64,000 nt of DNA from Octopus sinensis (lineage: Eukaryota). The stretch lies in NCBI RefSeq assembly GCF_006345805.1, contig NC_043011.1, positions 64,244,464 through 64,308,463 on the forward strand. The letters run 5' to 3'. Numbering within the stretch: the first letter of the stretch is position 1; every line of letters starts with the position of its first letter. Positions 7,005 to 62,974 of the stretch are shown piece by piece. The position numbers were made by a program, and so were the translations under genes. The notes under the pieces were generated by a model that did not search any database, had not been told where the DNA came from, and saw only the letters and a program-made list of their open reading frames with translations.

Positions 7005-7041
7005 ATGAAAATATTTATAATAAATGCGTTTCTCATTTCAG
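7005..7041 (+). CDS. Gene A exon 1: signal peptide MKIFIINAFLIS(G)
   Basis: ATG at 7005, strong donor G|gtaagt, phase 1; same layout as exon 1 of B and C. Confidence 0.85.
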
Positions 7042-7537
7042 GTAAGTATACAAATATCCTGAAACTTTTTTGACAAACATTTAAACCTACCTCGTAAACT
7101 CCTCTCCTCTTGAAATCTCTCTCTAACTCTTGCAATCGCTTTCATGCTATATATGTAGGCATGACATTTAGAAGAATTCAAAATTAGAAGTAAAACAATT
7201 TCTTTGTTGCTTAATTTGATAACTCAATATGTTGGCACAAATTCATTAACAACTCATGTTTGTCATTTATTTGAAACACTAAGAATCGAATGATTTCCCT
7301 TCAGTGATCATCATTCTTCTGCTTGTCTGGAATCGTAAGCAATTCATATATTGGCAGTTACATCGATATAAAATATACACATGTATATTTGAAGGAATTC
7401 ATACCCGTAATATATATTGTGTTCAAAAGTGTCCAGAGCATAAATGTACATTTTACTAAGGGATGTACATGAAAATTATAACTCATTATTATAAATGTAT
7501 GTTAAAGAATTAAAAATATTCATTTTAACTATTGTAG

Positions 7538-7637
7538 GTGTTATGATGGAGGAAAGTTGTGGTAAACTAGCAGAGAAGACATGCGAGTACCCAGCGCGGA
7601 TGTTCAATAACATTCACTATGAACAAAACTTTTGCAG
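7538..7637 (+). CDS. Gene A exon 2: GVMMEESCGKLAEKTCEYPARMFNNIHYEQNFC(S)
   Basis: ttgtag acceptor, gtacat donor, 100 nt, phase 1 to 2, identical length and Cys spacing to B and C exon 2. Confidence 0.92.
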
Positions 7638-8141
7638 GTACATTGTCATAAATAGTCAAACTGATATTCGGAATACTGCATCGCATGCTTCAACATTCCC
7701 ATATTGGTTACTGAATGTCTCTCTGCCTCTACTATTATCGCTTTCTTTTTCTTACATTCCTTTTCTTCCTTCTTTCTCCCTCACTCCCATCTCTCTGCAT
7801 GTGTAAGTGCGTATCTGTGTATTTGTTGGCGGGCTGATTGCACACGGTCGCCATAGGGATTAGGTCACATTTGATTCGCCTGCGCTGTCATCCCACCTCA
7901 GAGAATATATTATACGAAACATTATTTGTAAGAAATCCTCTCATAACAAAGAAACAAAAACCACCCATTTTTGAATGAGTTAAAAATCGAAATCTATATT
8001 GTGTCAATTCAAACATTTCAGAACGTTTGAGCCTATGCCACATAATGAAAAATATAAACCCATTGTGATCCTCTCCTTATGAATAGCTAAAAAATCACGA
8101 TTCCATCAGCGACGAAGGAAAAAGAACAAAACCAAATGATA

Positions 8142-8541
8142 ATCTTTTCTACTCTAGGCACAAGGCGCAAATAATTGGGGGACGGGGCCAGTCGATTAGA
8201 TAGACCCAAATACGTAACACCTACTTAATTTACCGGACCCCGAAAGGATGAAAGGCAGAGTTGACCCGGCAGAATTTGAACTCAGACCGTAAAGAAAGAG
8301 GAAATTCCTATATCTTTACTACCCACAAGGGGCTAAATGCAAAGAGCCCAAACAAGGACAGACAAACGGAATAAGTCGATTACATCGACCCCAGTGCGTA
8401 ACTGGTACTCAATTTACCGACCCCGAAAGGATCAAAGGCAAAGTCGACATCGGTGGAATTTGAACTCAGAACATGACAGCAGTCGAAATACGGCTTCGCA
8501 TTTCGCCCGGCGTGATAACGTTTCTGCCAGCTCACCGTCTT
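8142..8541 (-). mobile_element. Abundant tRNA-derived SINE
   Basis: Minus head gacggtgagctggcagaaacg...gagttcaaattcc (A/B boxes) with duplicated gtcgat...ggggtcgat body; homologous copies at 9672, 14015, 15338, 16050, 25496, 26820, 49288. Confidence 0.85.
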
Positions 8542-8590
8542 AAGACTAATTAATAACGGACCAGTGCAGTTAGAAAGAACACAAATAACA

Positions 8591-8748
8591 TCTCTGGATC
8601 TTTCCTTTCCCTATGTTACTGACGAAGAGCTCCGCTCGAAACGTTAAACCCTCCTTCTTCCCTTCCTTCCTGAGCGTCCAGTAATACTTTATTTGTTCCA
8701 CGTCCTTGCGTTGTTGTTTTTTCTCTTTGTGTTTTCATGTTTGGATTA

Positions 8749-8749
<1 letters not shown>
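8591..8749 (+). mobile_element. Short Penelope-like pseudo-LTR fragment (family also at 16356 and 60736)
   Basis: Three homologous copies in the window, each ending in ...ttaac + (AT)n and carrying a hammerhead-like motif. Confidence 0.65.
8614..8649 (+). ncRNA. Minimal type I hammerhead ribozyme motif
   Basis: CTGACGA (8619-8625), extra A, stem II GAG/CTC, GAAA (8638-8641), palindromic stem III ACGT, H17=U; stem I gtta/aaac has one mismatch. Confidence 0.55.
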
Positions 8750-8801
<52 letters not shown>

Positions 8802-9322
8802 ATGCATGTGTGTAGTCACACACGACGGTCTTCTTTCAGCTTTCACCTAACATGTTCATGCACAATTCTTTACTAGACGTGGGACTCTAATAAAGATACT
8901 TGTCCAGTGTGACACGCAGGGATATTCTATCTGGAACCATGTGGTTGGAAAGTAATCTTCGGAGCACACATCCACATGTATAATATACATACATTACTTC
9001 CGTGCATATGTTAAACTTTTCCACTCTTACGACGTAGTAAATTCCAGTGTCATCTTATTATATAAATGTGATTGCATGTAGTGCAATACCTGTACGCTAT
9101 CGCGTTATGTTTGTCGCGTATCTACAGTATTGCGAAGGAAATGAGTTGATCACACATCTCGTTATTTCTCAAATTTTGCTGTGTTTACGCTTGCCCAACT
9201 GCGTATAGGTGTGTCGTTGTAAACTGAACTTGATCACAGAACATTGTAAATTTTCAAAATCTACAAAACTTTTATATTTAGTTTTTTTAATCTAATATAT
9301 TGATTTTTATTTTGTCTCGCAG

Positions 9323-9410
9323 TACTTTCCTTGATTTTTCTCCATGTCTCATGGGTATATCTATAATTTGTGATGAATTCTACAAGTCATTCTTTTACGA
9401 AAAATGCCTG
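9323..9410 (+). CDS. Gene A exon 3: TFLDFSPCLMGISIICDEFYKSFFYEKCL
   Basis: tctcgcag acceptor, gtaaga donor, 88 nt, phase 2 to 0, same Cys spacing as B and C exon 3. Confidence 0.92.
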
Positions 9411-9671
9411 GTAAGAACGTTTCATTATTTTGGTTTCATTATGAGAAATGATGTACAGATGAATTAAATTTTATACCATTTGAAATTTTGTTACTTTACG
9501 CTCTCAGTTGGTGAATCTCTTAGAGATTGTATCGTTTTGAAGCAAGCACTTTATAACACAACGTGACGTTTCCTTACTATATATCAAGTGATAGTAGACC
9601 AACAGGAGATAATCTGTAATAATTTATCATTGCAAATCCGTATCACTTTTGTACATTACACATAAACCTTT

Positions 9672-10058
9672 GTACTGAAGGCACAGGACCAGAAAATAGG
9701 TGGAGAGAGGACTTGTCGATTACATCGACACAAATGTTTCACAACTGCTAAATTTATCGATCTCGAAAGAATAAGAAGCAAAGTCAACCTCGACGGAATT
9801 TAAACCCAAAACTTAGTAATGAGCGAAATACCTATTTCTTTACTACCCACTAGGGGCTAAAAAAAGAGAGGGCAAACAAGCGCAGAAAAACGGATTAAGT
9901 CGATTATATCGACCCCAGTGCGTAACTAGTACGTATTTAATCGACACCGAAAGGATGAAAAGCAAAGTAGACCTCGGCGGAATTTGAACTCAGAACCTAG
10001 CGGCAGATAAAGTACCGTTAAGCTCGGCGTGCTAAAGTTTCTGCCAGCTCGCTGCCTT
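9672..10058 (-). mobile_element. tRNA-derived SINE (same family as 8142)
   Basis: Homology to the 8142-8541 copy. Confidence 0.85.
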
Positions 10059-10199
10059 AGAATTGTTTAATAATATGTATTTGTAAAGTGCTGCTGTCAC
10101 TTTAAATTGGTGTTTCATTACAGAGCGATATATATGGACGCTGATGCATGAAATTCAAGTACATAAAATATATTAATGCTGTTGTTTTAGCTTGCTTAC

Positions 10200-10330
10200 A
10201 AACCATATGGTATCAGGTTCAGTCCCACTGTGTAGCACCTTGAGCAAGTTTCTTCTACTATAGCCTCGGGCCTACCAGAGCCTTGTGAGAGGATTCGGTA
10301 GACGGAAACTGAAAGAAACCCGTCGTATAT
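10200..10330 (+). mobile_element. SINE fragment (second family)
   Basis: B-box-like ggttcagtccc, then ...ggtagacggaaactgaaagaaacccgtcg + (AT)n tail. Confidence 0.55.
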
Positions 10331-10344
10331 ACATATATATATAC

Positions 10345-10441
<97 letters not shown>

Positions 10442-10477
10442 ATTTAATCAAAATAAAAACATGATGCCAAGGATTCA

Positions 10478-10555
10478 GCGGTACATATGTTTCGGGCCTT
10501 TATTAGACGGATTTATAACAATGCATAATGTATGTCTGTGGCCTTCTTCAGCCAC
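10478..10555 (-). ncRNA. Type I hammerhead ribozyme (left arm copy)
   Basis: GTGG-CTGAAGA-A-GGCC...GGCCC-GAAA-CATATGT-A-CCGC; stem I keeps a G-U wobble. Confidence 0.7.
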
Positions 10556-11988
10556 GCACAACAACTTCCACAAGGACATGTATTACATCAAAAATTCTTG
10601 GTTAGGGATGCAAATCCTCTCATTCGCGTACGACATAATGCGGCAACAGCATAAAAATGAAGCGTCCATCTCGTTCTTCTCTCAATGTAGAATGAAGAAA
10701 TTTGGATGTTGAAGTAATGTAAATAAATTAATAAATAAATATATACATATATAAATATATAAATGCAGACAGACGTGAAGGAACCTGGTAATAAGAGTAA
10801 ATAGAGATAAAGATGGAGGGGCGAGAATTCAGGACGAAGGATAAAAAATATATAAAAAGTGTAAGTATACAAAAATATAAAAATGTAGAGTATAAAGATA
10901 TAAAGAGTTATAAAAAATATTAAAAAAATTAAATGAATATAAATGTATAAAGTTATAAAAATAAAAATAGAAATAAAAATAATATAAAATGTAAAAGAAT
11001 ATAAGGATAAGGGATATATAGTAGTTACGGACCAAACATGGTGGTCAGGGAAATGACAAATACACACACACACACATACGTATACATATACACACACACA
11101 CACATACATGTATATGTATATATGTATATACGTATGTGTGTGTGTGTATGTATATGTACATGTATATTGTCCGTGTATATATATGCATATTCTGTTGTGT
11201 GTGTATATATATATGCGCATGTGTGTGTGTATATGTGTATCTGTATATGTTTACACGTGAGTACGTATGTATGCTTATATGCTTGTGGCTGGGTATGCGT
11301 GCATATATGTGCGCGTGTATATGGGTGTATGTATCCATGCGGGTACGTATGTACAAGATGACCACTTAATACGTTACGAAGAACTAGAGGAACGAGATAA
11401 GCTGCTCAACAACTCTAATTTACAATACACTAAGTCCCCAGAGGCCCCTGTTGATTTATGACACCCAAGACTTCTACAACCAGAATTTGTCATTTCCCTG
11501 ACCACCATGTTTGGTCCGTAACTACTATATATCCCTTATCCTTATATTCTTTTACATTTTTTATCATTTTTATTTCTATTTTTATTTTTATAACTTTATA
11601 CCTTTATATTCATTTATATTTTTTAATATTTTTTATATCTCTTTATATCTTTATACTCTACATTTTTATATTTTTCTATACTTACACTTTTTATATATTT
11701 TTTATCCTTCGTCCTGAATTCTCGCCCCTCCATCTTTATCTCTATTTACTCTTATTACCAGGTTCCTTCACGTCTGTCTGCATTTATATATTTATATATG
11801 TATATTTATTTATTAATTTATTTACATTACTTCAACATCCAAATTTCTTCATTCTACATTGAGAGAAGAACGAGATGGACGCTTCATCTCTATGCTGTTG
11901 CCGCATTATGTCGTACGCGAATGACAGGATTTGCATCCCCAACCCAGAATCTTTGATGAAATACATGTCCTTGTGGAAGTTGTTGTGC

Positions 11989-12066
11989 GCGGCTGAAGAA
12001 GGCCACAGACATACATTATGCATTGTTATAAATCCGTCTAATAAAGGCCCGAAACATATGTACCGC
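11989..12066 (+). ncRNA. Type I hammerhead ribozyme (right arm copy, sense to gene A)
   Basis: Stem I GCGG/CCGC, CTGAAGA 11993-11999, stem II GGCC/GGCC, GAAA 12051-12054, palindromic stem III ACATATGT, predicted cleavage after GUA at 12062. Confidence 0.75.
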
Positions 12067-12188
12067 TGAATCATTGGCATCATGTTTTTATTTTGATTAA
12101 TTTACTCTACCACCTACACCACCTACACCACCTACACCACCAAACGGTATATACAGGTGCTTACAATTATCAAGTATCACCCCGAATT

Positions 12189-12268
<80 letters not shown>

Positions 12269-12344
12269 GGAATATATGTTTGTGTGTCTGTGTTTGTCCT
12301 CTTCAACATCGCTTGACAACAGATGCTGGTGTGTTTACGTCCCT

Positions 12345-12490
12345 GTAACTTAGCGTTTCGGCAAAAGAGAGCGACAGAATAAGTACTAGGCTTACAAAGA
12401 ATAAGTCCTGGGGTCGATTTGCTCAACTAAAGGCGCTGCTCTAGCATGGCCACAGTCAAATGACTGAAAGAGTAAAAGAGTAAGAATAGA
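12345..12490 (+). mobile_element. SINE 3' half (family also at 63760-63965)
   Basis: ggggtcgatttgctcaactaaaggcgctgctctagcatggccacagtcaaatgactgaaa + A-rich tail; reverse copy near window end. Confidence 0.7.
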
Positions 12491-12537
12491 TAAATACACG
12501 CAGACACTTATAGACACAAACACGCGCACGCACGTAT

Positions 12538-12604
<67 letters not shown>

Positions 12605-12967
12605 CACTCACTGGTAAATGCTAAAAGGTTTGCCAACATCGAGGTCGCAGCTAGTGGCATTATGGCCTGATATAATTTTCTACAAAATCGAGTACACCGA
12701 TACCATTTATGCAAAAATAGTTTGACAGGAATTAGAGACAAGGGCACCCACGTAGAGTCTACAATTAATTAAAAAGTACATTAAGATATTCAGTATCAGT
12801 TGATTATGTACGTAAATGACGCCAAGAGCTCACGTGTCTATGACCATCTCATCCACCAAGACACTAATGTAGATGCAATGAATAATTTTGTCATCTTCGT
12901 AGAACAACGGAAATCCATTAGCATATACATGAGTGTATATTAGCTTATAAACACACACACGCACATA

Positions 12968-13011
<44 letters not shown>

Positions 13012-13304
13012 GATACAGTGATAATGAAGAATACTGAGTCATATCGACTACATGCATGCAAAAGACGTCGAATGACAAGAAAAGTCGCTTCATGTTAAGC
13101 TGAAAGCGACGAAATGTATGTAAAAGTGATTTAGTAAAATATATTTTGAGGTTAATTCTAGGTCGTCCGATCTCTGGTTTAGTAATACAATTACTTTACC
13201 GTCATCAGAAGATAATATAGAATAGAATATAACCAAATGTACATAAATGTAAATATGTATGTATATATATATGTCTATCAATCTATCAATATATATATAT
13301 GTAT

Positions 13305-13391
<87 letters not shown>

Positions 13392-13415
13392 CATATATAA
13401 TACATATACATATAC

Positions 13416-13474
<59 letters not shown>

Positions 13475-13834
13475 TACATAATTAAGGATAAAATCAATTA
13501 ATGTACTTATCAGTGGCGAGCATGTAACAAATGTCATACAGGTAAAACTTAATATAAATATATAATTATATATATATATATGCGCACACACACACACGCA
13601 CACATACACACACACACAAACATATATATATATATATGTATATATATACATATATACGCGTATGTTAATATGTGTCCGTTTGCAAACACACACAAACTCG
13701 TGGGCGCACGCACACATAGATATTATATTAGAGGAAGCTGCTTCTGGGATAACCCAAGCGGTAGGTTAGTATGACCACGGATTGGGTATTCGGCCATCAG
13801 TGACTAGTTATGAATATTTTAGATAAATAATATT

Positions 13835-13899
<65 letters not shown>

Positions 13900-13921
13900 T
13901 ATACGTGTATAAATGTTAAAT

Positions 13922-14612
13922 GGTAAAGATACCCTTCGGTTATCAATATCCATTTGATTGCACCTAGGAAGTTCACATCCAAAGCATAAATCGGGAGAGA
14001 TGTGGTCTATAGACGACGGCGAACTGGCAGGAACGCTAGCCTTCCGGGCGAAATGCTTAGCGGTATTCGTCTGCCGCTACGTTCTGTGTTCAAATTCCGC
14101 CAACGTCGACTTTACCTTTCATCATTTCGGGGTCGATTAGATATGTACCAGTTACGCACTGTGGTCGATATAATCGGCTTAACACGTTTGTCCCGTCTGT
14201 GTTTAGCTCCTTGCGGGTAGTAAAGAAATAGGTCTTTCGTCTGCCGATACATTCTGAGTTTAAATTCCGCACTGGGGTCGATGTAATCGACTTAATCCCT
14301 TTGTCTGTCCTTGTTTGTCACCTCTACGTTTAGCCCCTTGTGGGTAATACAGAATTAAGAATGCCATCTGTCACCCATGCATACCAGTCTCCCCTCTCAT
14401 GCCACCGACGTGAAGTAGGAGAGGCTGAGATCGATACACTTTCCTGCCACTTACGTCGCAACTCATTTCTATCGATGAGTTAAAGGGAGCATTATGAAAG
14501 AAGTATCTTTATTCATAGCACTACGCACAGCTCAGTTCTGGAATGGAACCCACTACCTCGTGACAGCAGAACCGACGCTGTAACCACTGAGCCATGCTCC
14601 TTCACACACCGG
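13922..14612 (-). mobile_element. tRNA-derived SINE split by a nested SINE
   Basis: 13922-14014 and 14358-14612 align in order with the intact copy at 58985-59318. Confidence 0.7.
14015..14357 (+). mobile_element. tRNA-derived SINE (8142 family), nested
   Basis: Head gacggcgaactggcaggaacgctagc...gtgttcaaattccgcc. Confidence 0.85.
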
Positions 14613-14775
14613 CATACATGCATTACACACACACACATATACATACACAAACATATTCATTGCCCAGTTATAAGTGAATGGCATGGTGGAATGTGAACCA
14701 AAGTATTTTGCCCTAACACACAATTTTACGCTGATCTGTGAATCGATAGTATAACCTTTCACTTAGCCACGTTCA

Positions 14776-14819
<44 letters not shown>

Positions 14820-15337
14820 ACACACACATGGCAGATTTCATACGTTCAATATATAACTCGTGAGTTGTTTTGCTTTCAGTACTATGAAACACTCAGGCCC
14901 GATCGCTTAAAAACGGTGAGTAATACACATTTGAAATATCGTTTTATCTACCAATATAACATAACCCATATTGTATTTGTGGTGTCGTTTCAATTACGAA
15001 CATTACGTCATACTTACTGAGTTATTTTAGTAGAATTCTACTTAAAACACTACTCTTGCATTTCCAATAATTTCTGGCATTAACACGGCATCGAATTGCT
15101 CTATCGATAAGACTGTAGCTGTACTAAGTGAAATACAAGTCATAAGGACGCAGTGTTCGCTCAGTTTTGTCATCTCTCCCCATTTTTCCTTTAAACTAAT
15201 GAATCAGCGCATTACTTTCAGTCTAATGCCCGTATGGCACTGTAAGCATGGAGTATGAATAATGTATATAAACAGAAAAGTTTGTAAGTTAGGTAAAATG
15301 CCAATTTTTTTTATTAGGGATTACTGGACACCTCGAT

Positions 15338-15728
15338 ATTCTTTTCTACTCTAGTCACAAGGCCCGAAATTTTGGGGAGAGCGGGCCAGTCGATTAAATT
15401 AACCCATGTATGCAATTGATATTAATTTATTGTCCCCGAAAGGATGAAAGGTAAAGTCGACCTCGGTGGAATTTGAACGTAAAGACAGATGAATTACCTA
15501 TATCTTTACTACCAACAGGGCTAAACACACAAGGCATAGACAAGGACAGACATAGGTATTAAGTCGATTACATCGACCCCAGTGCGTAACTGGTACTTAA
15601 TTTATCGAGCCCCAAAGGATGAAAAGCAAAGTCGATCATGGCGGAATTTGAAGTCAGAACGTAACGGCAGACGAAATACCGCTAAGTATTTCACCTGGCA
15701 TGCTCACCTTTCTGCCAACTCACCGCTT
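15338..15728 (-). mobile_element. tRNA-derived SINE (8142 family)
   Basis: Homology to the 8142-8541 copy. Confidence 0.85.
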
Positions 15729-16217
15729 TCGATAAATCGATATTGGACTGGAACTTCATTTTCTCGACCGGGAGAGATGCAAAGAGCAATCAGCCGCAGC
15801 GAGATTTGTAATCACAAATTAAAGAGATCGATACCTTGCATAACAGAATCATAAAAGAATCGTATTAGGTAATAATGCCGATGTACTTTCGGAATACGAG
15901 GTCAAATCCATGACAAATTTATCAGGCAATGGATATTAGTATTAAGATATTCTATCAGTAACAGCTAAACAGATGCTTTGACGAAATGGGTTTCAAATAT
16001 TTGGCAGAAACACAGTGTTCAATTGGTGATTTTTATTTTCATCCCTAAATGATTGCAAGCAGAGTTGACCTTGGCGTAATTTGAACTCAGAACGTAAAGT
16101 CGGACGGAATGCCAGATAGTCTTTTCCCCGGCGTCCTAACAATTCTGCAAGCTCACCGTTTTACGAGCAAGTATATCATTAACACGTGTATACATACATA
16201 CATACATACCCCCCCAC

Positions 16218-16248
<31 letters not shown>

Positions 16249-16265
16249 CGTTATCTATCTCTCTC

Positions 16266-16335
<70 letters not shown>

Positions 16336-16355
16336 GAGAGAGAGAGAGAGAGAGA

Positions 16356-16551
16356 GATAATGTGACCGCGTGTGTAACGTTGGCGATTTTTTTCCTCCGT
16401 CTCCCCTTCTTTGGATCTTTCCTTTTCCTATGTTTCTGGAAACGTTAAACGCTTTTTCTTTCCTTCTTTCCTGAGCGTCCAATAACACTATACTTGTTCC
16501 ACGTCCTGGCGTTGTTGTATTTTCTCTTTGTGTTTTCATGTTGGGATTAAC
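16356..16551 (+). mobile_element. Short pseudo-LTR fragment with deleted hammerhead core
   Basis: Homologous to 8591-8749 but tgtttctg joins directly to gaaacgttaaac (16 nt of core and stem II missing). Confidence 0.7.
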
Positions 16552-16557
16552 TATATA

Positions 16558-16617
<60 letters not shown>

Positions 16618-16761
16618 TTCATAAACATACAATGACGCACAGATACATGTGCGCGGACACACACATGCATATTGCATATGTGTCTTTCTGGTGCATGTGT
16701 TTGCGCGCACTCGTGTCTGTGTGTGTGGTATACTTACAGTATTTCAATTCATGTCTTCCAG

Positions 16762-16800
16762 AAATCTGCAGCGGCTAAAATTTCAACCGCCCCACAAAAG
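16762..16800 (+). CDS. Gene A exon 4: KSAAAKISTAPQK (putative omega-site linker)
   Basis: tcttccag acceptor, AAG|gtaagc donor, phase 0-0; positionally equivalent to the 33-nt exon 4 of B and C, but not similar to it in sequence. Confidence 0.7.
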
Positions 16801-17967
16801 GTAAGCAAGACACTTACGGAATATCATTAAATATCACAGATATTCCAGACAAAAACCTTCAATAAGGCTCCACCATCGCTTAATTAACCAGTAATTCATT
16901 ATCAATCATATTTTAGTGTTCTTTCGTGTAATTTGCAGCTAAAAGCCCATCTCATAATCTGCATGTCTCATAGATAAGTGTAAATATGTAGTATTATATG
17001 ACGAAAAAAATTATACTTAAGCATTATTTATTCATCATTGATTGTCATCTCTCTTTTATACTAATACATCAAGCTGTTACTTTCATTTATTTAACCACTG
17101 TAGCGATGGTACAATTTAATATGAATAATTTATAAATAAATACGTATTACATATCTACTTATAATGCAACGTCATGAATGCAATAATAGTTAATAATACT
17201 ACATTATTTTAATATATAATAGGCCAATAAAATTAATTCTACTACTAGTAGTATAATATAGACTGTGTAGTAACAGTCAATGCCTTGCTACATTCCATCT
17301 GTAGCTAACGAAATACACGTTTTGAAAGCTCTAATCATATAATCCACAGCAATGTTTAATTTGTCCCTCGCTTCAAAATGGCAATTTTCGAGGAAATAAT
17401 AAAACAAGTGACCAATTCCTCATTTGTTTCGCTGTACATATTGAGAGAAACCCTCTAAAATTACCCAAAAGTTCACCAGAAAATATTACACAATTATGAG
17501 CGCCATTGAAAGGTTCGATGGTTGGGACAGCGTAAGCCTTCTATATGGAGAAGGTTTTCACATGATCCGTACGCATTTATTTTGACAGTTTGCATTCGTG
17601 TTCTTAAACGACCTTTGCGTAAAAAAAGAAAAGAAATGAATGCCTAGTAGTTAGAGAATCTTTCGTTGCAGAAGCGTGCGATGAAATTTTGTGAAAACGA
17701 TAAATTTTCACTATTTAATAATATATATTACCTGCTATAGTATTTATTACCTACTTTATCCATTTTATAAAGTGATATCCTGATCAGTGCATCACTTTTG
17801 AGGAATATTTGACACTAGCTAGTCCGCAAGTGCTTGTTTACAGTAAACTCCAATCCGGAAAACGTTCGAGTTTGGAACTCTTGATATATACTAAGATTAT
17901 TGTTTAATTTATATTAAGCTCTCACATCTCCAGATATTTCAATAATGGCTCTTTTATATTTTTACAG

Positions 17968-18027
17968 GTCACAATGGAATGCTTCCTGGTTATAGCAGTA
18001 ACCATTAAATTGTTGATACATATGTGA
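17968..18027 (+). CDS. Gene A exon 5: VTMECFLVIAVTIKLLIHM* (hydrophobic tail)
   Basis: tttttacag acceptor; 19 codons + TGA, same length and V..E..L..A....L.I pattern as C exon 5; AATAAA at 18027-18032. Confidence 0.85.
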   Translation, partial: VTMECFLVIAVTIKLLIHM

Positions 18028-22064: not shown

Positions 22065-22104
22065 ATGAAAATTATTGCTATCTTCGTTCTAGTGCTAACG
22101 TTTG
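22065..22104 (+). CDS. Gene B exon 1: signal peptide MKIIAIFVLVLTF(G)
   Basis: ATG at 22065, G|gtaagt donor, phase 1; upstream flank homologous to gene C upstream. Confidence 0.9.
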
Positions 22105-26664: not shown

Positions 26665-26764
26665 GTGTTGCGATATCAGAGGATTGCAATGTGTGGGCAC
26701 AAAGGAACTGTGGCGTATCCGCATCGTATTTCTTCTCACTCGATTCTGACAAACGTTTTTGCAG
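26665..26764 (+). CDS. Gene B exon 2: GVAISEDCNVWAQRNCGVSASYFFSLDSDKRFC(R)
   Basis: tttttag acceptor, gtagat donor, 100 nt, phase 1 to 2. Confidence 0.92.
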
Positions 26765-29228: not shown

Positions 29229-29316
29229 ATTAATGGAAGAGAAGAAAGCCTGTCTTTACATAAAAGTCAATAGTTGTAATAAATTCTTCGATTTCTTTAA
29301 ATATCATAAATGTAAG
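29229..29316 (+). CDS. Gene B exon 3: LMEEKKACLYIKVNSCNKFFDFFKYHKCK
   Basis: ttctctcag acceptor, AAG|gtaaga donor, 88 nt, phase 2 to 0. Confidence 0.92.
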
Positions 29317-43660: not shown

Positions 43661-43889
43661 ATGCAAAATTTAGAGGAATGACCACTAAAAGTGGACATCG
43701 GGTATGCTAGATATAGACGTCAAAATCGCCATTTTCCACGGTGAATGCGTTCTCAAGAAAAACCTCAGCAAAAAAATAAAGTTGAATTCTTTCTTGAGAA
43801 CACATTTTCCGTGGAAAATGGCGATTTTGACGTCTATATCTAGCATACAGGCTGTCCACTTTTAGTGGCCAATCCTCTAAATTTTGTAT
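43661..43889. repeat. Foldback palindrome, ~100-bp arms
   Basis: tatgctagatatagacgtcaaaatcgccattttccacgg pairs with ccgtggaaaatggcgattttgacgtctatatctagcata; ~30-nt loop. Confidence 0.9.
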
Positions 43890-44159: not shown

Positions 44160-44267
44160 CTTCGTAACAGAACAGATATCAACGGTGACACAGCATGTAG
44201 TTTCCAATGTAACATTCTGTTAATATTTCACCATTATGCGAGAGCTGGTGTAGGTTTTCATCAATAA
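44160..44267 (+). CDS. Gene B exon 4 with read-through: LRNRTDINGDT-ACSFQCNILLIFHHYARAGVGFHQ*
   Basis: catttcag acceptor; the first 33 nt are homologous to C exon 4; the donor position reads gcatgt instead of gtaggt; the frame continues to TAA inside AATAAA (44263-44268). Terminal structure is inferred. Confidence 0.65.
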   Translation, partial: LRNRTDINGDTACSFQCNILLIFHHYARAGVGFHQ

Positions 44268-44476
44268 ACTCAGGTTATCACCGAATAAGTATTTCAATAT
44301 CTTATCCAGATTGTGAAGTGTTATAATGGAATTTCAGTATTGTTTTAGTTCTTAATTTCCACACAAACCTTTCGAATATTCCTAACAAAACAGATTTAAT
44401 AACTGCGAAATGTTTCATTAATATAGCTTCAAAGTAAGATCTATACTGAATTGTGCTGTCGTTGGTATGATAAGCT

Positions 44477-44549
<73 letters not shown>

Positions 44550-44595
44550 TGTTGTAGTAGTGGTGGTGGTGGTGCTGTTAGTAGTAGTAGTAGTG

Positions 44596-44686
<91 letters not shown>
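44477..44686 (+). repeat. (AGT)n microsatellite
   Basis: Direct inspection. Confidence 0.95.
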
Positions 44687-45032
44687 AATCTTTTGTTTTA
44701 TCAGTTGTTATGAACAACACACCCGTTATGTTTATATGAGTGCATCATAGAACGCAGATTAAACTTAGAGATTTTCAAAATAATATGTCGGAAAAACTAA
44801 TACCGTTGAGAAGTATGTGGAAATATAATTTCATGTACAGATAATTAGTTTAACTCTCGGTGCATAATTTTTCTTGGGAAGAACGGTGCAAGTTATATTC
44901 AGTGTTAACACTACAAGTTATCCTTTCCCCTTCTTTATCTAAAAATAAATAAATGCGCCCTTTTCAGGCCTAGCTAGGGTCATACGCCCGGTTTCCCGGT
45001 TTCTATGGCATATATATTCACCAGCTGGACGG

Positions 45033-45300
45033 TGAAGATCAGTCTCTATTCTCCAATTCCAGTGTGAGTGCTATATCACTTGTGCAATATGAAATTCGGA
45101 TTTTACCTATCAACATTGCCAATATTACGTTGGCATGAATTTCCAAATTCCCACAAAGCATGTTCACAGTGCCTTCCGTCGTCGTCTACAGCATTTCTTT
45201 TACCCTCACGTGACACTTAACTAGTACCGCGTCCTTTAACATTCCTTAGAGGCATTTTTAGGATGGAACAGAACTCGTCAAATCCAAACGTCTCCTGAAC
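45033..45300 (+). mobile_element. CR1/L2-group LINE fragment upstream of gene C
   Basis: Homologous to 21380-21640, at the equivalent position upstream of gene B. Confidence 0.65.
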
Positions 45301-45891
45301 ATATTCTGTTATGTCTGGGGAGAGTCATTTACTTTTTGTGCCTTATAAAGTAACACACACACACACACACACACACCGGTGAAATTTCCACTTAATTCTA
45401 TTTTCCTAAATTTTAAACTGCGTCTTGCAACCTTTACAATAGTCTTGACTCTTGAACAGATACCTCCAAATAATCTTAGTTTTAACCACGGAACTATAAA
45501 TCTTTGCGAAAGTTATTAATACGTGGTTAATAGTCAATGAGTAGATCATTTAGTTTTTGGTCTGTTGTAATCCAAAATGAGGATTACAGCGTGAAATATA
45601 TAATGACATTTCCACCTGTTGTCATTAGTTTAGCACTTGTCCGAGCTGATGAAGGCTAAAAAATATACAAGTGTGTAAGTTTATGAATAAACGATAATAT
45701 ATATTAACGTATATTTATGTGTTCTGTAAATCATTGAATGATTGAAACATATTATAATAATCCACCTCTCATAATTAATGAATCATTCCCGATGTCAGAC
45801 ATCTGTTACAATCCTCTTTATTAAAAAAAGACAAGGCTACTTATTCAACATTATTACACATGCAAACGTTTGCATTTACTCGATATTAACG

Positions 45892-45928
45892 ATGAAAATT
45901 ACTCTCTTCGCTTTACTTCTGATGTTTG
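45892..45928 (+). CDS. Gene C exon 1: signal peptide MKITLFALLLMF(G)
   Basis: ATG at 45892, G|gtaaga donor, phase 1. Confidence 0.9.
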
Positions 45929-46029
45929 GTAAGATTTTTCTTCATTTATTTTTATTTCGATGGAAGTATGTTCCACTATTTTTAATCTCTCAACGGCTGA
46001 ACATCAGCCACAAAAAAAACAACATCCGA

Positions 46030-48285
46030 ACACCAAGTCGGGTACGACTTGGATTTTACACAGCTGGACAGTCGACATTTAAAGGTATGTGAAACGGGTT
46101 TTATCCTTCACTTTACAGTTCCTTATGCCACAAGTAATTTCGACAGTCGTATACACCTATATGTTCCTGGTGCTATTGTCTCCTTCCTCGACATTGCCAC
46201 GAGAATAAGTATCGGCAGCGATTGTATGAGACACGTCTGTGGTAAAAATCCTGTGATCGGTTAAAGCCGTAAAATGAAGGTGGAGGCCAGGTTGCAAGGT
46301 TTAGAAGATGTACAGGCAGCGTAGATCGCGCGGCGCCTAAAGAAATCGGGCAGCGCCTCCTTTAAGGGAGGATCGTACTGTGCGTTGGACAAGATAACAA
46401 CGGTCAGGTTCAGAACTGAAAAGGTATGCAACGGAGGTTCGGTGACTCGCCATACTAACTGGTTTTACAGAAAAGGCACTAGAAAAGATGACACGATTGA
46501 ATCACAATACAATCGCAGGATGGTTTCCAACATCATGCAAGACATGAGCATACGAGGCAAGCTTGGTTGACCAAGTGGCCAAGAGTACGGTGGCAATAAT
46601 GCAGGAGATGCTAGAATGGGTAAGAGCAGAAAACCGAGTGTGAGAAAGCTGGTGTGTTCCCAAATTGGAGAACTTAACCATATGGTGCGATGCTAGTAGC
46701 ACAGCGATATGATTTGTCCTGGAAATCGGTGGTGTCGTGGCAGAATACGAAAGCGGGTTCCGACCGAAAATCAGACGAATACAACCATTCTAACGTGGAT
46801 TAGATGGAGGCAGTGCTGAAGTGGGTGACTCTGGCTCTAAGATGGGGGTCTTGTCTCAATCGAAATCCGAACCAATTCGGGTAGTGTGCTTGGATGTGTA
46901 GGATATGTGATCTGCGATGAAAAGGTGTCTCGAACAAAAGAGTCTGCAGAATGGTTAGTAGATGCCGCCTAAGAAGGTAGGCTTGTCGCCGAATTTCGTT
47001 TAAAGCTGAACGTGACATTGTCTTCTGAGAAGAATAAAGCAAATATTCTAACCAAGATGAAAAATGCCAGTTTGGTGATGACTTAAGATTCGGAGCGGAG
47101 CATAGCTACAGTTTGTCGGCTCGGTGACTTTTAACTGAGCAAACCGTAAGCCATGCATCATATTGGCGCGGATAGAAAGAACCATGTATCTTGCCAGGAG
47201 GATGGTTCCGACGTCACTAGGCAGGGCATTCAAAAGCTCATCGGGAGCTCTAATCGGTCTCAATTCATCGAACCTACTTTGGGTGTGAGCGAAACATATC
47301 AATATATCACAGCTGGAGACAAACTGGTGGTGGATGTGACACATTATCGGCAGAAGACAAATACCTCGCTGGTCGACTGCTGACCGGGTTTCATGGCCGT
47401 GTGCTGGGAAATTAAGACTGGTACTGCAGATGAAGTTGCGCGTGTCCTGAACGACATATTCCTGGAGCGGGACGCAGTAGACAGATTGCTGTTGGACAAC
47501 GGACCCTCATATAATTGATAAATGCAACGTATACCGCTTCTTCATAGCGTCATACAGACCTTGTTAAAACAAGATCGTGGTAAGGCGCCACCGCTCCATC
47601 AAGGCCATAATGAAGAGAGGACGCATCTCAGCACTGGAAGCAGTTTTCCTACAACATATCACCCAGATCAGGACAGGCTGGTAAGTTGGTGTCACGCAAT
47701 GCAATGTGTGGGTATGAATAGCGGCATCCGTGTACATTACAACACGCCGCAGGTAGAAGAGGAAGTTTGGGTCAAGCCTCCAAGGGTACGCTGTACATTT
47801 CAGTGGAACGAAGGCTGTTAATTCCAAACGTAATGTCCCCCTGGATGGAATGTCGCTTCATGTTTGGATGTTTGCAGAATTGTGAAGGAGCAGTTGCGAG
47901 CGGAAACCACATAAATGGGAGATGTGACAGGAAGATGGAGATTTCAAAATGAAGTGGGAGGGTGACCTTTAAAATCACAGGAACGTGTGGGGATGAGCTA
48001 AAATGGTAGGATAGGGCAGTGTGCATAGGTGCGGCGTGTCGCCAGAGGAGGAAGCCGGAACGATTTAGCGATGGGATCAAGACAAGCGTGGCCCTGTTTG
48101 GCCTCGAAACTGTAGTGGTGATTGGGCACGTGGGGACGAGACAGTGACACGTTGACTTAGCAGTAGCTACTGCTGAAGGGCGAGACGCGTAGGTCACTTT
48201 TTGGATTTAACACGGCTGGACAGCCGACACAGGGAGGTTGGTGAATTCCGTTCTCTTCCTCACATTACAGTTTGTTCATGCTAAA
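46030..48285 (+). mobile_element. Degenerate Gypsy-like LTR element, paralogous to 22522-25016
   Basis: KLVVDVTHYRQKTNTSLVDC integrase remnant; LTR-like repeat acacagctggacagtcgac / acacggctggacagccgac at both ends. Confidence 0.8.
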
Positions 48286-48297
48286 GCTTATATATCT

Positions 48298-48298
48298 G

Positions 48299-48396
<98 letters not shown>

Positions 48397-48427
48397 AATC
48401 TTTCTTTCTTTCTTTCTTTCTTTCTAC

Positions 48428-48460
<33 letters not shown>

Positions 48461-48486
48461 AATCTTTCTTTCTTTCTTTCTTTCTT

Positions 48487-48528
<42 letters not shown>

Positions 48529-48635
48529 AATCTTTCTTTCTTTCTTTCTTTCTTTCTACCTATCTATCTATATGTCTGTCTGTCTATCTCTGTATCTATC
48601 TATCTATCTATATATCTATCAGTCTGTCTGTCTGT
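48298..48635 (+). repeat. (TCTA)n/(TCTT)n compound microsatellite with higher-order repetition
   Basis: Direct inspection. Confidence 0.95.
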
Positions 48636-49134
48636 AGGTATATACATATATATGTTAATATGTTTACATTCATTCATGCATACAGGTAACACACATGTAG
48701 ACCGAAAATATGCGAGTGAATTTCTTGCATATTTCGAAGATCTAATATATGCCATTTTTTCTATTGTAACATATCGATGAGTGTTTGATCCATTTTAAAA
48801 ATCTCGTTTGATATTGATTTTCTCTCAAAAAGAAGTCGGGCATCTTTTTATAGAAATCCCTTCATATTAGGTTATTTCTGCGCTGTTTATTGACTTGCAG
48901 ATGTGACAAGACATAATAATACGTTACTACACATAACTATCTTTGTTTTAAATAATTTACAAAGTATTCGTAAAATAATTTTCATCCACCGGGCGTATCG
49001 TCATATAACAGAAGCTAAAATGTTTAAATCGTTCACCCTCTCGAAAGGTTAACAGACTATAACGGATGTTTTACTAAGTGAGGTATTCGTTAAACACTTC
49101 AAAACTGAAAAAAAAATATTTTCGAACTTTCTAG

Positions 49135-49234
49135 GTGTTGCGGTGTCAGACGATTGCAGTAGATTGGCAGAGGAACGCTGTAGGTTGTCCAGAAAATATT
49201 TCTACACACTCCATCATCAATATCGTTTTTGCAG
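49135..49234 (+). CDS. Gene C exon 2: GVAVSDDCSRLAEERCRLSRKYFYTLHHQYRFC(R)
   Basis: tttctag acceptor, gtatat donor, 100 nt, phase 1 to 2. Confidence 0.92.
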
Positions 49235-49884
49235 GTATATACATGTTCAAACTATTAAAGTTTTTATTAAAATATTTAAATATTCAAAGTCGGTGAGCAG
49301 GCAGAATCGTTAGCTGACGCTTAGCGTCATTTTCTCTAAATTTCCCCCAGGGAGGCTTTGTCTTTCATCTCTTCGGGTTCGATAAAATAAGTACCAATCA
49401 AGTACTGAGGTCGATTTAATAGACTTACTACAATTACCCGAAATTGCTGGTCGTGTGCCAATATTTTAATGCAGTATTACAATATGTAATTGCTTTTCCT
49501 CTGTTTCTAGGATCTGAATTCAAATTCCCCTTGCTTCCTTGTAATTAGTTTGACTTTAACCACTTTAGTGGTTGAAAATATGCGCATCTGTGATCACGAG
49601 CAGAAATGGTGAGGGCGTAATACAGACATGTGTTGAAAGGAATTCTTTGGGGTTTGGATAACAATTCAGTTTTGTTCAACATCATTAAACAACTATTATT
49701 GAGGGAGTTTTTGAGCCGGTTGGGGAGCTCCTCGAGAAGAAAATTGTAACTCGACCACGCCTGCAAGTTCATACGTTGTTTATCTTGATATGAGATCACT
49801 ATGTCGCACACATATGTTTCTGGTGCATCTGCCTTGTGTACCCTTATCAGACGAGGAATCATGATGGGTGTACTTTTCTCTCAC

Positions 49885-49933
49885 TGAATAATAATGATAA
49901 TAATAATAATAATAATAATAACAACAACAGCAG

Positions 49934-50003
<70 letters not shown>

Positions 50004-50089
50004 GCCACTACCACTACTACTACTACTACTACTACTTCTATTACTACTACTTCTACTACTACTACTTCTACTACTAATACTACTACTAT

Positions 50090-50124
<35 letters not shown>

Positions 50125-50150
50125 GTATTAGTATTAGTATTAGTAGTAGT
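49885..50150 (+). repeat. (AAT)n/(ACT)n compound microsatellite
   Basis: Direct inspection. Confidence 0.95.
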
Positions 50151-51703: not shown

Positions 51704-51776
<73 letters not shown>

Positions 51777-55605: not shown

Positions 55606-55662
<57 letters not shown>

Positions 55663-55744: not shown

Positions 55745-55813
<69 letters not shown>

Positions 55814-57550: not shown

Positions 57551-57638
57551 ATTACTCCGAAGGTATAGAGTTTGTCTTTTTGGAATAAGTGATGAATGTT
57601 TTGCATATTTCAGGTTCTACCATTATTATAAATGTGTG
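57551..57638 (+). CDS. Gene C exon 3: LLRRYRVCLFGISDECFAYFRFYHYYKCV
   Basis: ttctttcag acceptor, GTG|gtaaga donor, 88 nt, phase 2 to 0. Confidence 0.92.
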
Positions 57639-61094: not shown

Positions 61095-61127
61095 CTTAAT
61101 AACGGAGCAGATATCAACAGAGATATG
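61095..61127 (+). CDS. Gene C exon 4: LNNGADINRDM (putative omega-site linker)
   Basis: taatttcag acceptor, ATG|gtaggt donor, phase 0-0. Confidence 0.85.
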
Positions 61128-62914: not shown

Positions 62915-62974
62915 GTCAGGCTGGAAACATTGTTGGCCTTTGCATTTGTCACTCAATTAATGATAAGGAAATAA
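62915..62974 (+). CDS. Gene C exon 5: VRLETLLAFAFVTQLMIRK* (hydrophobic tail)
   Basis: tcctctttgcag acceptor; 19 codons + TAA; AATAAA at 62970-62975. Confidence 0.85.
   Translation, partial: VRLETLLAFAFVTQLMIRK

What the first reader, a model, noticed from the sequence alone, without database searches (positions are those of the whole stretch)
44160..45035. Gene B lost its anchor exon and may be a secreted variant made by intron read-through
Seen: homology with gene C intron 4 continues to ~44820 and then breaks near a SINE-like remnant (~44950-45030), just before the LINE relic upstream of gene C; no exon 5 equivalent exists between 44193 and 45892. The exon 4 donor is GC (ACA|gcatgt) where C has GT (ATG|gtaggt). 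The frame runs 24 more codons, including two extra Cys, to a TAA inside an AATAAA that the paralogous C sequence lacks. Exons 1-4 have no stops. An N-R-T glycosylation sequon replaces the small-residue NNG. Inference: an anchored-to-soluble switch (decoy or released form); a young pseudogene is the alternative.
Basis: partly seen in the sequence, partly recalled or inferred. Interest (0 to 1): 0.75.

Follow-up and report, generated by a model that had tools for sequence, protein, structure and literature searches.

The report
Octopus gene copy lacking its membrane-anchor exon
In a cluster of three small cysteine-rich octopus genes, the middle copy really does lack the last exon, which encodes the greasy tail that probably tethers its neighbours to the membrane, so it most likely makes a secreted version, a familiar kind of evolutionary switch seen here in an uncharacterised octopus-only family.

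Summary
The core observation holds. The window is octopus DNA, 1.85% diverged from an Octopus vulgaris chromosome. It carries three tandem paralogs (A, B, C) of an orphan family: signal peptide, a six-cysteine domain in a 100-nt and an 88-nt exon, a short linker exon 4, and in A and C a 60-nt exon 5 encoding a hydrophobic tail.

B has exons 1-4 only. Its exon-4 donor is GC. The frame reads 24 more codons to a TAA inside AATAAA. No exon-5-like sequence lies before gene C, and the O. vulgaris assembly shows the same.

Two details fail. B/C intron homology stops at 44423, not about 44820. The "SINE remnant" has no other copy.

B has not drifted since the duplication: keeping the ORF, six Cys and splice sites has P of about 0.001 under neutrality, and exons 1-3 match O. 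vulgaris exactly. O. bimaculoides has a RefSeq paralog (LOC128249835) with the same four-exon, donor-less, hydrophilic-tailed build.

A secreted, anchor-less B is therefore the best reading (about 0.55). B may have been born truncated by a partial tandem duplication rather than having lost an exon. There is no transcript evidence, and the GPI anchor is inferred. The 24 codons and two Cys are within chance. The switch itself is a known kind, so interest is modest.

The parts
22065..22104 (+). Gene B exon 1 (signal peptide MKIIAIFVLVLTF, phase-1 donor TTTG|gtaagt)
   Evidence: It is identical in O. vulgaris.
26665..26764 (+). Gene B exon 2 (100 nt, Cys1-Cys3 of the six-Cys domain)
   Evidence: There are 0 substitutions against O. 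vulgaris.
29229..29316 (+). Gene B exon 3 (88 nt, Cys4-Cys6; donor AAG|gtaaga)
   Evidence: It is identical in O. vulgaris, and it is the piece shared with database protein P0001.
44160..44192 (+). Gene B exon 4 (LRNRTDINGDT, with the N-R-T sequon at 44166-44174), ending at a GC donor (ACA|gcatgt)
   Evidence: There are 2 nonsynonymous differences from O. vulgaris, and the GC donor is conserved.
44193..44267 (+). In-frame read-through of the former intron 4: 24 codons (ACSFQCNILLIFHHYARAGVGFHQ) plus TAA at 44265-44267
   Evidence: There is 1 nonsynonymous difference (G to V) in O. vulgaris, and the frame stays open there. The length is within chance.
44263..44268 (+). AATAAA hexamer overlapping the read-through stop; candidate poly(A) signal
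   Evidence: It is absent at the paralogous C position (CGATAAGT) and conserved in O. vulgaris. P(first stop overlaps AATAAA) = 0.026. The exon-5 stops of A and C also overlap AATAAA.
44206..44423 (+). Remnant of intron 4 homologous to C intron 4 (61140-61364, about 71% identity); B/C homology ends here
44478..44688 (.). (TAG)n-rich microsatellite at the junction between the B unit and the C unit
   Evidence: sequence.
44689..45033 (.).
   Evidence: It is present at 94.6% identity in O. vulgaris.
45034..45891 (+). 5' flank and promoter region of gene C, homologous to B's 5' flank (21384-22064). The start of the duplication unit includes a weak LINE 3'-end relic at 45035-45180
45892..45928 (+). 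Gene C exon 1
49135..49234 (+). Gene C exon 2
57551..57638 (+). Gene C exon 3
61095..61127 (+). Gene C exon 4 (LNNGADINRDM, GT donor)
62915..62974 (+). Gene C exon 5 (VRLETLLAFAFVTQLMIRK*, hydrophobic tail; the stop lies inside AATAAA). This is the exon B lacks
7005..18027 (+). Gene A, a complete 5-exon paralog. Exons: 7005-7041, 7538-7637, 9323-9410, 16762-16800 (KSAAAKISTAPQK), 17968-18027 (VTMECFLVIAVTIKLLIHM*)

Best explanation
Gene B is a maintained, anchor-less member of an octopus-restricted family of small secreted six-cysteine proteins. The domain is predicted to be helical.

In the complete members (A and C here; LOC128249866, O3 and the minus-strand paralog in O. bimaculoides), a short linker exon rich in small residues is followed by a 16-19-codon exon encoding a hydrophobic C-terminus. 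Together these look like a GPI-attachment signal.

B ends after exon 4. With no downstream exon to splice to and a degenerate GC donor, transcription most likely runs into the former intron. Translation would stop at the TAA 24 codons on, and the overlapping AATAAA would direct polyadenylation. The product would be a soluble protein with the same six-Cys core, a new N-glycosylation sequon and a non-conserved tail.

The truncation most likely dates from B's origin. A tandem duplication would have had its 5' breakpoint about 680 bp upstream of the ATG and its 3' breakpoint inside intron 4, leaving the upstream copy without exon 5.

Shown: gene structures, absence of exon 5 in two assemblies, conservation of B's coding capacity, and an analogous annotated gene in O. 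bimaculoides.

Inferred: GPI anchoring of A and C, read-through and polyadenylation, secretion, and truncation at birth.
For: - Exon models for A, B and C share lengths and phases (37/40, 100, 88, 33/39, 60 nt). All have canonical sites except B's exon-4 donor.
- Exon 5 is present in A and C but absent downstream of B in the window and in O. vulgaris L001.
- The B/C duplication unit runs 21384-44423 and 45034-61364, so its 3' edge lies in intron 4.
- Under neutral evolution at the B/C divergence (dS about 0.43), P(ATG, no stop, six Cys and six splice dinucleotides all kept) is 0.0003-0.0016, before counting frameshifts.
- The intron alignment has 21 gap columns in 431, whereas the coding exons have a single in-frame 3-nt indel.
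- B exons 1-3 show 0/228 substitutions against O. vulgaris, compared with 1.2-1.85% in flanks and overall. A, B exons 1-3 and C exon 1 together show 2/589.
- The GC donor, TAA and AATAAA are conserved in O. vulgaris.
- O. bimaculoides LOC128249835 (P0004) has four exons. Its last exon runs straight through the position of the old donor (GACACC|ATGCTT) to a stop after 12 more codons. Its tail is hydrophilic, and no exon-5-like sequence lies within 10 kb downstream.
- Hydropathy: the tails of A, C, 866 and M have a best 11-aa Kyte-Doolittle (KD) score of 1.8-2.8 at the C-terminus. B's read-through tail ends hydrophilic (mean of last 12 residues -0.76) and 835's is flat.
Against: - There is no transcript evidence. 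Searches of 5.8 billion protein clusters found no protein matching B's or C's spliced product, only the chimeric O. vulgaris model P0001.
- B-C dN/dS is about 1.1, so pairwise data alone show no purifying selection.
- Exon 4 plus tail differ from O. vulgaris at the local neutral rate, and all three changes are nonsynonymous.
- The 24-codon extension and two Cys are expected by chance, and an AATAAA nearby has P = 0.08.
- GPI anchoring was not tested with a predictor or experiment.
- The conservation of exons 1-3 against O. vulgaris is only marginally significant for B alone (P about 0.015-0.07).
Confidence: 0.55

Rival explanations
1. B is a dead or dying truncated duplicate (a pseudogene). 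The open frame, the read-through stop and the AATAAA are accidents of AT-rich sequence, and no stable product is made.
For: - There is no exon 5 and the GC donor is degenerate.
- dN/dS against C is about 1.1.
- Exon 4 plus tail evolve at the neutral rate with only nonsynonymous changes.
- The tail's features are within chance.
- The gene is not annotated as such in O. vulgaris, and no matching proteins or transcript ORFs are in the databases.
Against: - Retaining the ATG, an 87-codon ORF, all six Cys and six splice dinucleotides at this divergence has P of about 0.001 under neutrality, and less once indels are counted.
- Exons 1-3 are identical to O. vulgaris (0/228).
- High dN/dS with a conserved Cys scaffold is the family-wide pattern: 21-41% identity among eight copies, all keeping six Cys.
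- Only a very recent death would fit, yet the exon-5 absence already predates the split from O. vulgaris.
Confidence: 0.27
2. B still makes an anchored protein. The GC donor at 44192 is used and spliced to a distant phase-0 exon, most plausibly C's exon 5 at 62915, as a shared 3' exon.
For: - B exon 4 ends in phase 0 and C exon 5 starts in phase 0 on the same strand.
- GC-AG introns do exist (general knowledge).
- The GC is conserved in O. vulgaris.
Against: - The donor context is poor (ACA|GCATGT). GC donors normally need a near-consensus context (general knowledge).
- The splice would have to skip C's promoter and the good acceptors of C exons 2-4 over 18.7 kb, and C exon 2 is phase-incompatible.
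- The analogous O. bimaculoides gene has no donor at all.
Confidence: 0.06
3. B had a full exon 5 and lost it later through a deletion. This is the reader's wording, as opposed to truncation at birth by a partial duplication.
For: - Once the 1.25-kb foldback insertion in C intron 4 is discounted, ancestral exon 5 lay only about 300 bp beyond the point where B/C homology ends.
- The 610-bp junction, with its microsatellite and 345 bp of orphan sequence, could be the scar of a deletion.
Against: - A deletion would have had to remove exon 5 and all of the 3' flank yet stop just short of C's duplicated 5' flank at 45034.
- No trace of C's 3' flank (62975-64000) is found near B.
- A single partial duplication explains the same layout in one step.
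Confidence: 0.4

Closest known systems
Ly6/uPAR clusters with GPI-anchored and secreted paralogs (e.g. LYNX1/SLURP2, SLURP1)
   Same: Both are tandem clusters of small, disulfide-rich, signal-peptide proteins in which most members carry a C-terminal GPI signal. Some paralogs or isoforms lack it and are secreted modulators (PMC4839075).
   Different: The fold and cysteine pattern are unrelated. This family has six Cys, is predicted helical, and gives no UPAR_LY6 Pfam hit. Anchoring and secretion are experimentally known for Ly6 but not here.
Acetylcholinesterase H (GPI) versus R ('read-through') C-terminal variants; intronic polyadenylation giving soluble forms
   Same: The mechanism matches. 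Sequence just after the last common exon is retained, giving a short novel hydrophilic tail and a soluble product instead of the GPI-signal exon (general knowledge, not tested here).
   Different: In AChE this is alternative processing of one gene. Here it would be hard-wired in one paralog because the anchor exon is absent from the DNA.
O. bimaculoides LOC128249835 (XP_052830339.1), an uncharacterised protein
   Same: It belongs to the same family, with the same 100+88-nt exon pair and Cys spacing. It has four exons, exon 4 runs through the former donor to a nearby stop, the tail is hydrophilic, and there is no exon 5 nearby.
   Different: Its exon 4 is 39 nt and its extension is 12 codons. 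It is 29% identical to B and 40% to C in the domain, so orthology to B is unresolved. No DNA-level synteny is detectable.
Repulsive guidance molecule N-terminal domain (Pfam RGM_N, PF06535; PDB 4uhz RGMB-ND)
   Same: RGM-ND is a three-helix bundle with three disulfides on a GPI-anchored protein (PMC7354924). The octopus domain has six Cys and is predicted as about three helices. It gives sub-threshold RGM_N hits (E 0.0086-0.11), and RGMB-ND is the top PDB profile hit, with the C-x8-C-x7-C motif aligned.
   Different: Scores are 13-15 bits against a gathering cut-off of 24.2. Foldseek finds no match. The rest of the RGM architecture (the vWD-like domain with its autocleavage site) is absent. 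This is a lead, not a membership.
Partial (3'-truncated) tandem gene duplicates that recruit intronic sequence as a new 3' end
   Same: The duplication boundary lies inside an intron. The upstream copy lacks the last exon and ends in formerly non-coding sequence. This is a known outcome of segmental duplication (general knowledge).
   Different: Here the missing exon is specifically the membrane-anchoring signal, so the truncation changes localisation rather than removing part of the fold.

Membership tests
Octopus six-Cys family (LOC128249866 / LOC128249835-like) | A signal-peptide exon 1 (37-40 nt, phase 1), a 100-nt exon 2 and an 88-nt exon 3, with Cys spacing C-x7-C-x16-C-x8-C-x7-C-x11-C | tested here: met
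   B, A, C and five O. bimaculoides copies share the exon lengths (one copy's exon pair is 3 nt shorter), and the six Cys are invariant in all.
Octopus six-Cys family (LOC128249866 / LOC128249835-like) | A terminal 16-19-codon exon encoding a hydrophobic C-terminus (V-[RTG]-[ML]-[ED]-...) | tested here: not met
   It is present in A, C, 866, O3 and M, and absent for B (in both the window and O. vulgaris) and for LOC128249835.
GPI-anchored proteins (applies to A and C, the proposed ancestral state) | An N-terminal signal peptide, plus a C-terminal signal made of small omega/omega+2 residues, a polar spacer and a hydrophobic tail reaching the C-terminus | tested here: inconclusive
   By inspection and hydropathy only. 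The linkers are SAAA/IST-A (A), NNG-A (C), EAST (866) and SQNGG (M). The tails have a best 11-aa Kyte-Doolittle (KD) score of 1.8-2.8. No GPI predictor was available.
GPI-anchored proteins (applies to A and C, the proposed ancestral state) | Release by PI-PLC or detergent-phase partitioning | not testable with these tools
   This is an experiment.
Read-through / intronic-polyadenylation soluble variant | An in-frame stop and a poly(A) signal shortly after the unspliced donor | tested here: met
   The TAA is at 44265-44267 inside AATAAA at 44263-44268, and both are conserved in O. vulgaris. The chance level for this is 0.026.
Read-through / intronic-polyadenylation soluble variant | Transcripts that actually end there | not testable with these tools
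No transcript-derived protein is in the databases.
RGM_N (PF06535) | A score above the Pfam gathering threshold | tested here: not met
   The best scores are 15.5 bits (P0006) and 13.2 bits (P0004) against a cut-off of 24.2. Other members give no hit.
RGM_N (PF06535) | A three-helix bundle with three disulfides | tested here: inconclusive
   The AF2 core has pLDDT of about 70-79 with helices at 16-28, 41-59 and 63-76. Foldseek finds no PDB match.
Ly6/uPAR three-finger domain | A UPAR_LY6 profile match or the 8-10-Cys beta-rich pattern | tested here: not met
   There is no Pfam hit at E of 10 or below. The domain has six Cys and is predicted all-helical.

The most novel reading that the evidence does not exclude
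An octopus-restricted, very fast-evolving family of GPI-tethered, stand-alone RGM-N-like three-helix modules repeatedly spawns soluble paralogs by turning linker exon 4 into a terminal exon. B in the O. vulgaris group and LOC128249835 in O. bimaculoides would be two such cases. The result would be membrane-bound/soluble ligand or decoy pairs, possibly for BMP/GDF-type or other cephalopod-specific signalling.
Probability: 0.15. Interest if true: 0.6.

Novelty: new member of a known kind. Interest (0 to 1): 0.35.

Why it matters
If B is expressed, it is a clean natural example of a protein moving from membrane-tethered to secreted through a single structural event, a partial tandem duplication that ends inside the last intron. 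It sits in a lineage-restricted cephalopod family that nobody has characterised. The anchored and soluble neighbours A/C and B, together with the O. bimaculoides pair 866 and 835, would make a ready-made comparison for working out what this family does. The switch itself is well known from Ly6/SLURP, AChE and other families, so the value lies mainly in annotation and in defining a new octopus gene family, not in a new principle. A practical by-product is that the current O. vulgaris model covering this locus is a chimera of genes A and B and should be split.

Tried and rejected
- **Hidden exon 5.** I looked for a hidden or divergent exon 5 after B with BLAST using C exon 5 and its flanks, a family-motif scan, and a scan of every AG acceptor followed by a phase-0 short ORF with a hydrophobic tail. 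None found a candidate.
- **Homology up to about 44820.** I tested the claimed extent of homology. Local alignment scores beyond 44423 equal those of shuffles.
- **'SINE-like remnant'.** It has no other copy in the window, L001, L002 or L003, and Rfam gives nothing.
- **Conserved intronic poly(A) element.** I asked whether the start of intron 4 is conserved between the old paralogs, prompted by A's CAATAAG at a similar position. A versus B or C gives z of 1.9 or less, so it is not significant and I dropped the idea.
- **Look-up of a LINE ORF to name the organism.** It is not on record.
- **Word-index search with C.** No hit.
- **DNA synteny with O. bimaculoides.** Only interspersed repeats align, so B/LOC128249835 orthology stays unresolved. 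Domain identities are B-835 29%, C-835 40% and B-C 39%, and their intron starts are not significantly similar.
- **Fold assignment.** AF2 gave pLDDT 55.6 and 60.6. Foldseek against PDB gave only spurious matches with E above 8.
- **Single-sequence PDB search with P0006.** Noise only.
- **Literature search for the locus names and for octopus cysteine-rich or GPI families.** Nothing specific.
- **Shared-terminal-exon model (B exon 4 to C exon 5).** I considered it and rated it unlikely.
Full report
**What the window is.** The sequence is AT-rich, microsatellite-rich animal DNA. The only database protein sharing words with gene B is a 'hypothetical predicted protein' of Octopus vulgaris (P0001). 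Its locus is L001 (GCA_951406725.2, OX597831.1:16538044-16593251). L001 is colinear with window positions 48-47190 and differs by 1.85% substitutions over 45 kb. The window therefore comes from a very close relative or another haplotype of O. vulgaris.

**Gene models.** I used self-comparison of the window at DNA and peptide level, followed by inspection of splice sites. This gives three tandem paralogs on the + strand with the same architecture.
- Gene A: exons 7005-7041, 7538-7637, 9323-9410, 16762-16800 and 17968-18027.
- Gene B: exons 22065-22104, 26665-26764, 29229-29316 and 44160-44192.
- Gene C: exons 45892-45928, 49135-49234, 57551-57638, 61095-61127 and 62915-62974.

Exon 1 encodes a signal peptide. 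Exons 2 (100 nt) and 3 (88 nt) encode a 62-residue domain with six Cys, spaced C-x7-C-x16-C-x8-C-x7-C-x11-C. Exon 4 (33-39 nt) is a polar linker rich in small residues. Exon 5 (60 nt) encodes VTMECFLVIAVTIKLLIHM* in A and VRLETLLAFAFVTQLMIRK* in C. In both A and C the stop codon overlaps an AATAAA. No other family copy is in the window.

**Checking the observation.**
- B's exon-4 donor is ACA|gcatgt, where C has ATG|gtaggt.
- The frame continues for 24 codons (ACSFQCNILLIFHHYARAGVGFHQ, two Cys) to the TAA at 44265-44267.
- That TAA lies inside AATAAA at 44263-44268, where C has CGATAAGT.
- Exons 1-4 are open.
- N-R-T replaces N-N-G.

There is no exon-5 homolog or look-alike between 44193 and 45891. 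This was tested by BLAST, by a family-motif scan, and by a scan of every AG acceptor followed by a short phase-0 ORF. The O. vulgaris assembly aligns through the whole interval without extra sequence, so this is not an assembly gap in one genome.

Two details are wrong or unsupported:
- B/C intron-4 homology stops at 44423/61364. It is followed by 54 bp, a (TAG)n array at 44478-44688, and 345 bp that match nothing above shuffled background.
- The 'SINE-like remnant' has no second copy in the roughly 170 kb of octopus DNA held here, and no Rfam match.

Some features carry little weight by themselves. In this window at least 24 open codons occur with P = 0.30, an AATAAA within 80 nt with P = 0.084, and about 0.84 Cys are expected in 24 random codons. 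Only the stop overlapping an AATAAA is somewhat unusual (P = 0.026), and A and C share that trait.

**How B came to lack exon 5.** The B and C units are homologous from 21384/45034 (about 680 bp upstream of each ATG) through exon 4 to 44423/61364. C's unit begins only 610 bp after B's homology ends. No trace of C's exon 5 or 3' flank is present near B.

A tandem duplication of a segment running from the 5' flank to a breakpoint inside intron 4 produces exactly this layout in one step. The upstream copy lacks exon 5 and the downstream copy is complete. A later deletion is possible but would have had to end just short of C's duplicated flank. I therefore rate 'born truncated' slightly above 'lost', but cannot settle it without outgroup genomes.

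**Is B alive?** B and C are old duplicates. Alignable intron is about 70-72% identical, dS is about 0.43, and the proteins are 44% identical. Pairwise dN/dS is about 1.1.

That ratio alone would fit a pseudogene, but the scaffold argues otherwise:
- Simulated neutral evolution at half the B-C distance keeps the ATG, an open 87-codon frame, all six Cys and the six splice dinucleotides in only 0.03-0.16% of trials.
- The intron alignment has 21 gap columns in 431, whereas the coding exons have one in-frame 3-nt indel.
- Against O. vulgaris, B exons 1-3 have 0/228 substitutions, where 2.6-4.2 are expected (P about 0.015-0.07).
- A, B exons 1-3 and C exon 1 together have 2/589, against about 11 expected.

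High dN/dS with an invariant Cys frame is the family pattern. Eight copies from two species are 21-41% identical yet all keep six Cys, and all but one (a 185-nt pair) keep the 100+88-nt exon pair. By contrast, exon 4 plus the read-through tail differ from O. vulgaris at the local neutral rate (3/108, all nonsynonymous). The tail sequence itself is therefore probably unconstrained.

**Relatives elsewhere.** A full HMMER scan of 1.84 billion representatives with P0001, and a profile search of 5.8 billion clusters, find only octopus proteins:
- O. bimaculoides LOC128249866 isoform X1 (P0005) has five exons, the linker NSHELKKLEASTTRNM and the tail VRMDLLFSAVLLYKLI.
- Isoform X2 of the same gene (P0003) skips exon 4.
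- LOC128249835 is P0004.
- A0A0L8HFY8 (P0006) has the linker SQNGGTAQKKG and the tail MTELLLSIAASSYLMRYL.

The two O. bimaculoides loci (L002, L003) also hold two unannotated copies. One of them has an exon 5 encoding VGMELAFASAVANKFIY.

LOC128249835 is the key comparison. It has four exons. Its last exon starts like exon 4 and runs straight through where the donor should be (GACACC|ATGCTT) to a stop 12 codons later. Its tail is hydrophilic, and no exon-5-like sequence lies within 10 kb downstream.

**The anchor.** The linker plus tail of A, C, 866 and M is 29-32 residues long. It has a cluster of small residues, then a polar spacer, then an 11-15-residue hydrophobic end (best 11-aa Kyte-Doolittle score 1.8-2.8). 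This is the layout of a GPI-attachment signal on a signal-peptide protein. That is inference. No predictor was available, and only PI-PLC-type experiments can prove it. B's read-through tail has a short hydrophobic patch (CSFQCNILLIF) but ends hydrophilic, so it does not look like a replacement signal.

**What the domain is.**
- Pfam gives no significant hit.
- Two paralogs give sub-threshold matches to RGM_N (E 0.0086-0.11, 13-15 bits against a cut-off of 24.2).
- The family profile's top three PDB hits are RGM N-terminal-domain chains (RGMB, and one shared with RGMC), with the C-x8-C-x7-C core aligned (E 0.88-1.6).
- RGM-ND is a three-helix bundle with three disulfides on GPI-anchored BMP/GDF co-receptors (PMC7354924).
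- AF2 with a four-sequence alignment predicts about three helices with core pLDDT of about 70-79.
- Foldseek finds nothing.

I record this as a lead of about 25-30%, not a membership.

**Verdict.** The most likely reading (about 0.55) is a maintained, secreted, anchor-less paralog whose exon 4 became the terminal exon, probably from the moment of a partial tandem duplication. The main rival (about 0.27) is a non-functional truncated copy. Use of the GC donor to reach a distant exon is unlikely (about 0.06).

The principle of anchored and soluble paralogs or isoforms arising by loss or bypass of the C-terminal signal exon is well known from Ly6/SLURP (PMC4839075) and, from general knowledge, from AChE-H/R. 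This is therefore a new member of a known kind in an uncharacterised octopus-specific family. Transcript mapping is the decisive missing test.

Noticed in passing
window 1733-37274; L001 10001-45208: The only annotated protein at this locus (O. vulgaris P0001, 136 aa) is a chimera. It joins a far-upstream exon (1733-1765), gene A exons 2-3, a frame-shifted part of B exon 2 (26665-26715), B exon 3 and a terminal exon, ELLDLTPYINRCCSNDE. In L001 that last exon exists on both strands (45152-45205 on + and 46032-45979 on -). The window has only the minus-strand copy (37274-37221). Genes A and B should be split, and gene C has no matching protein in the databases searched (its locus lies mostly outside L001).
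   Followed up: partly
L003 10001-15133 (O. bimaculoides LOC128249866): RefSeq isoform X2 (P0003) skips exon 4, the linker that would carry the omega site, and joins Cys6 almost directly to the hydrophobic tail. Alternative splicing may therefore also modulate anchoring in complete family members.
   Followed up: no
window 17968-18027 and 62915-62974: In both complete genes the stop codon of exon 5 overlaps an AATAAA (TGAATAAA in A, AAATAAAG in C), implying extremely short 3' UTRs. B's read-through stop has the same arrangement.
   Followed up: partly
window 61618-62872: A foldback element of about 1.25 kb, with inverted arms of about 455 bp (61618-62074 versus 62872-62422, 70% identity), fills most of C intron 4. 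Without it, exon 5 would lie only about 300 bp beyond the end of B/C homology.
   Followed up: no
window ~43663-43888: A near-perfect palindrome of about 225 bp (MITE-like; arms ...aaatttagaggaatgaccactaaaagtggaca... and its complement) sits 270 bp upstream of B exon 4. It is flanked by long (TA)n tracts.
   Followed up: no
window 30099-33710 (- strand): A LINE with reverse-transcriptase ORFs (for example 30445-31326, 293 aa) lies inside B's 14.8-kb intron 3. A second retroelement relic with integrase-like frames lies in intron 1 of both B (23141-24432) and C (46383-47747), so it predates the duplication.
   Followed up: no
window 10440-11061 vs 12104-11485: A 622-bp inverted repeat at 97% identity lies inside gene A intron 3.
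   Followed up: no
window 8138-8541, 9662-10073, 14015-14270, 15335-15728, 25485-25705; L002/L003 several sites: An interspersed repeat family of about 400 bp (SINE-like) is shared between the window and the O. bimaculoides loci at 72-88% identity. It is the only DNA that aligns between the two species here.
   Followed up: no
family alignment A2; P0006 residues 3-47, P0004 residues 39-63: The family shows sub-threshold similarity to the RGM N-terminal domain (Pfam PF06535; PDB 4uhz_B), with the C-x8-C-x7-C core aligned. RGMs are also GPI-anchored, and their N-terminal domain is a three-helix, three-disulfide BMP/GDF-binding module.
   Followed up: partly
window 44478-44688 vs L001 ~52350-52560: The (TAG)n array at the B/C junction appears to differ in length between the window and the O. 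vulgaris assembly (the BLAST pieces overlap there), so it is a polymorphic or fast-evolving microsatellite.
   Followed up: no
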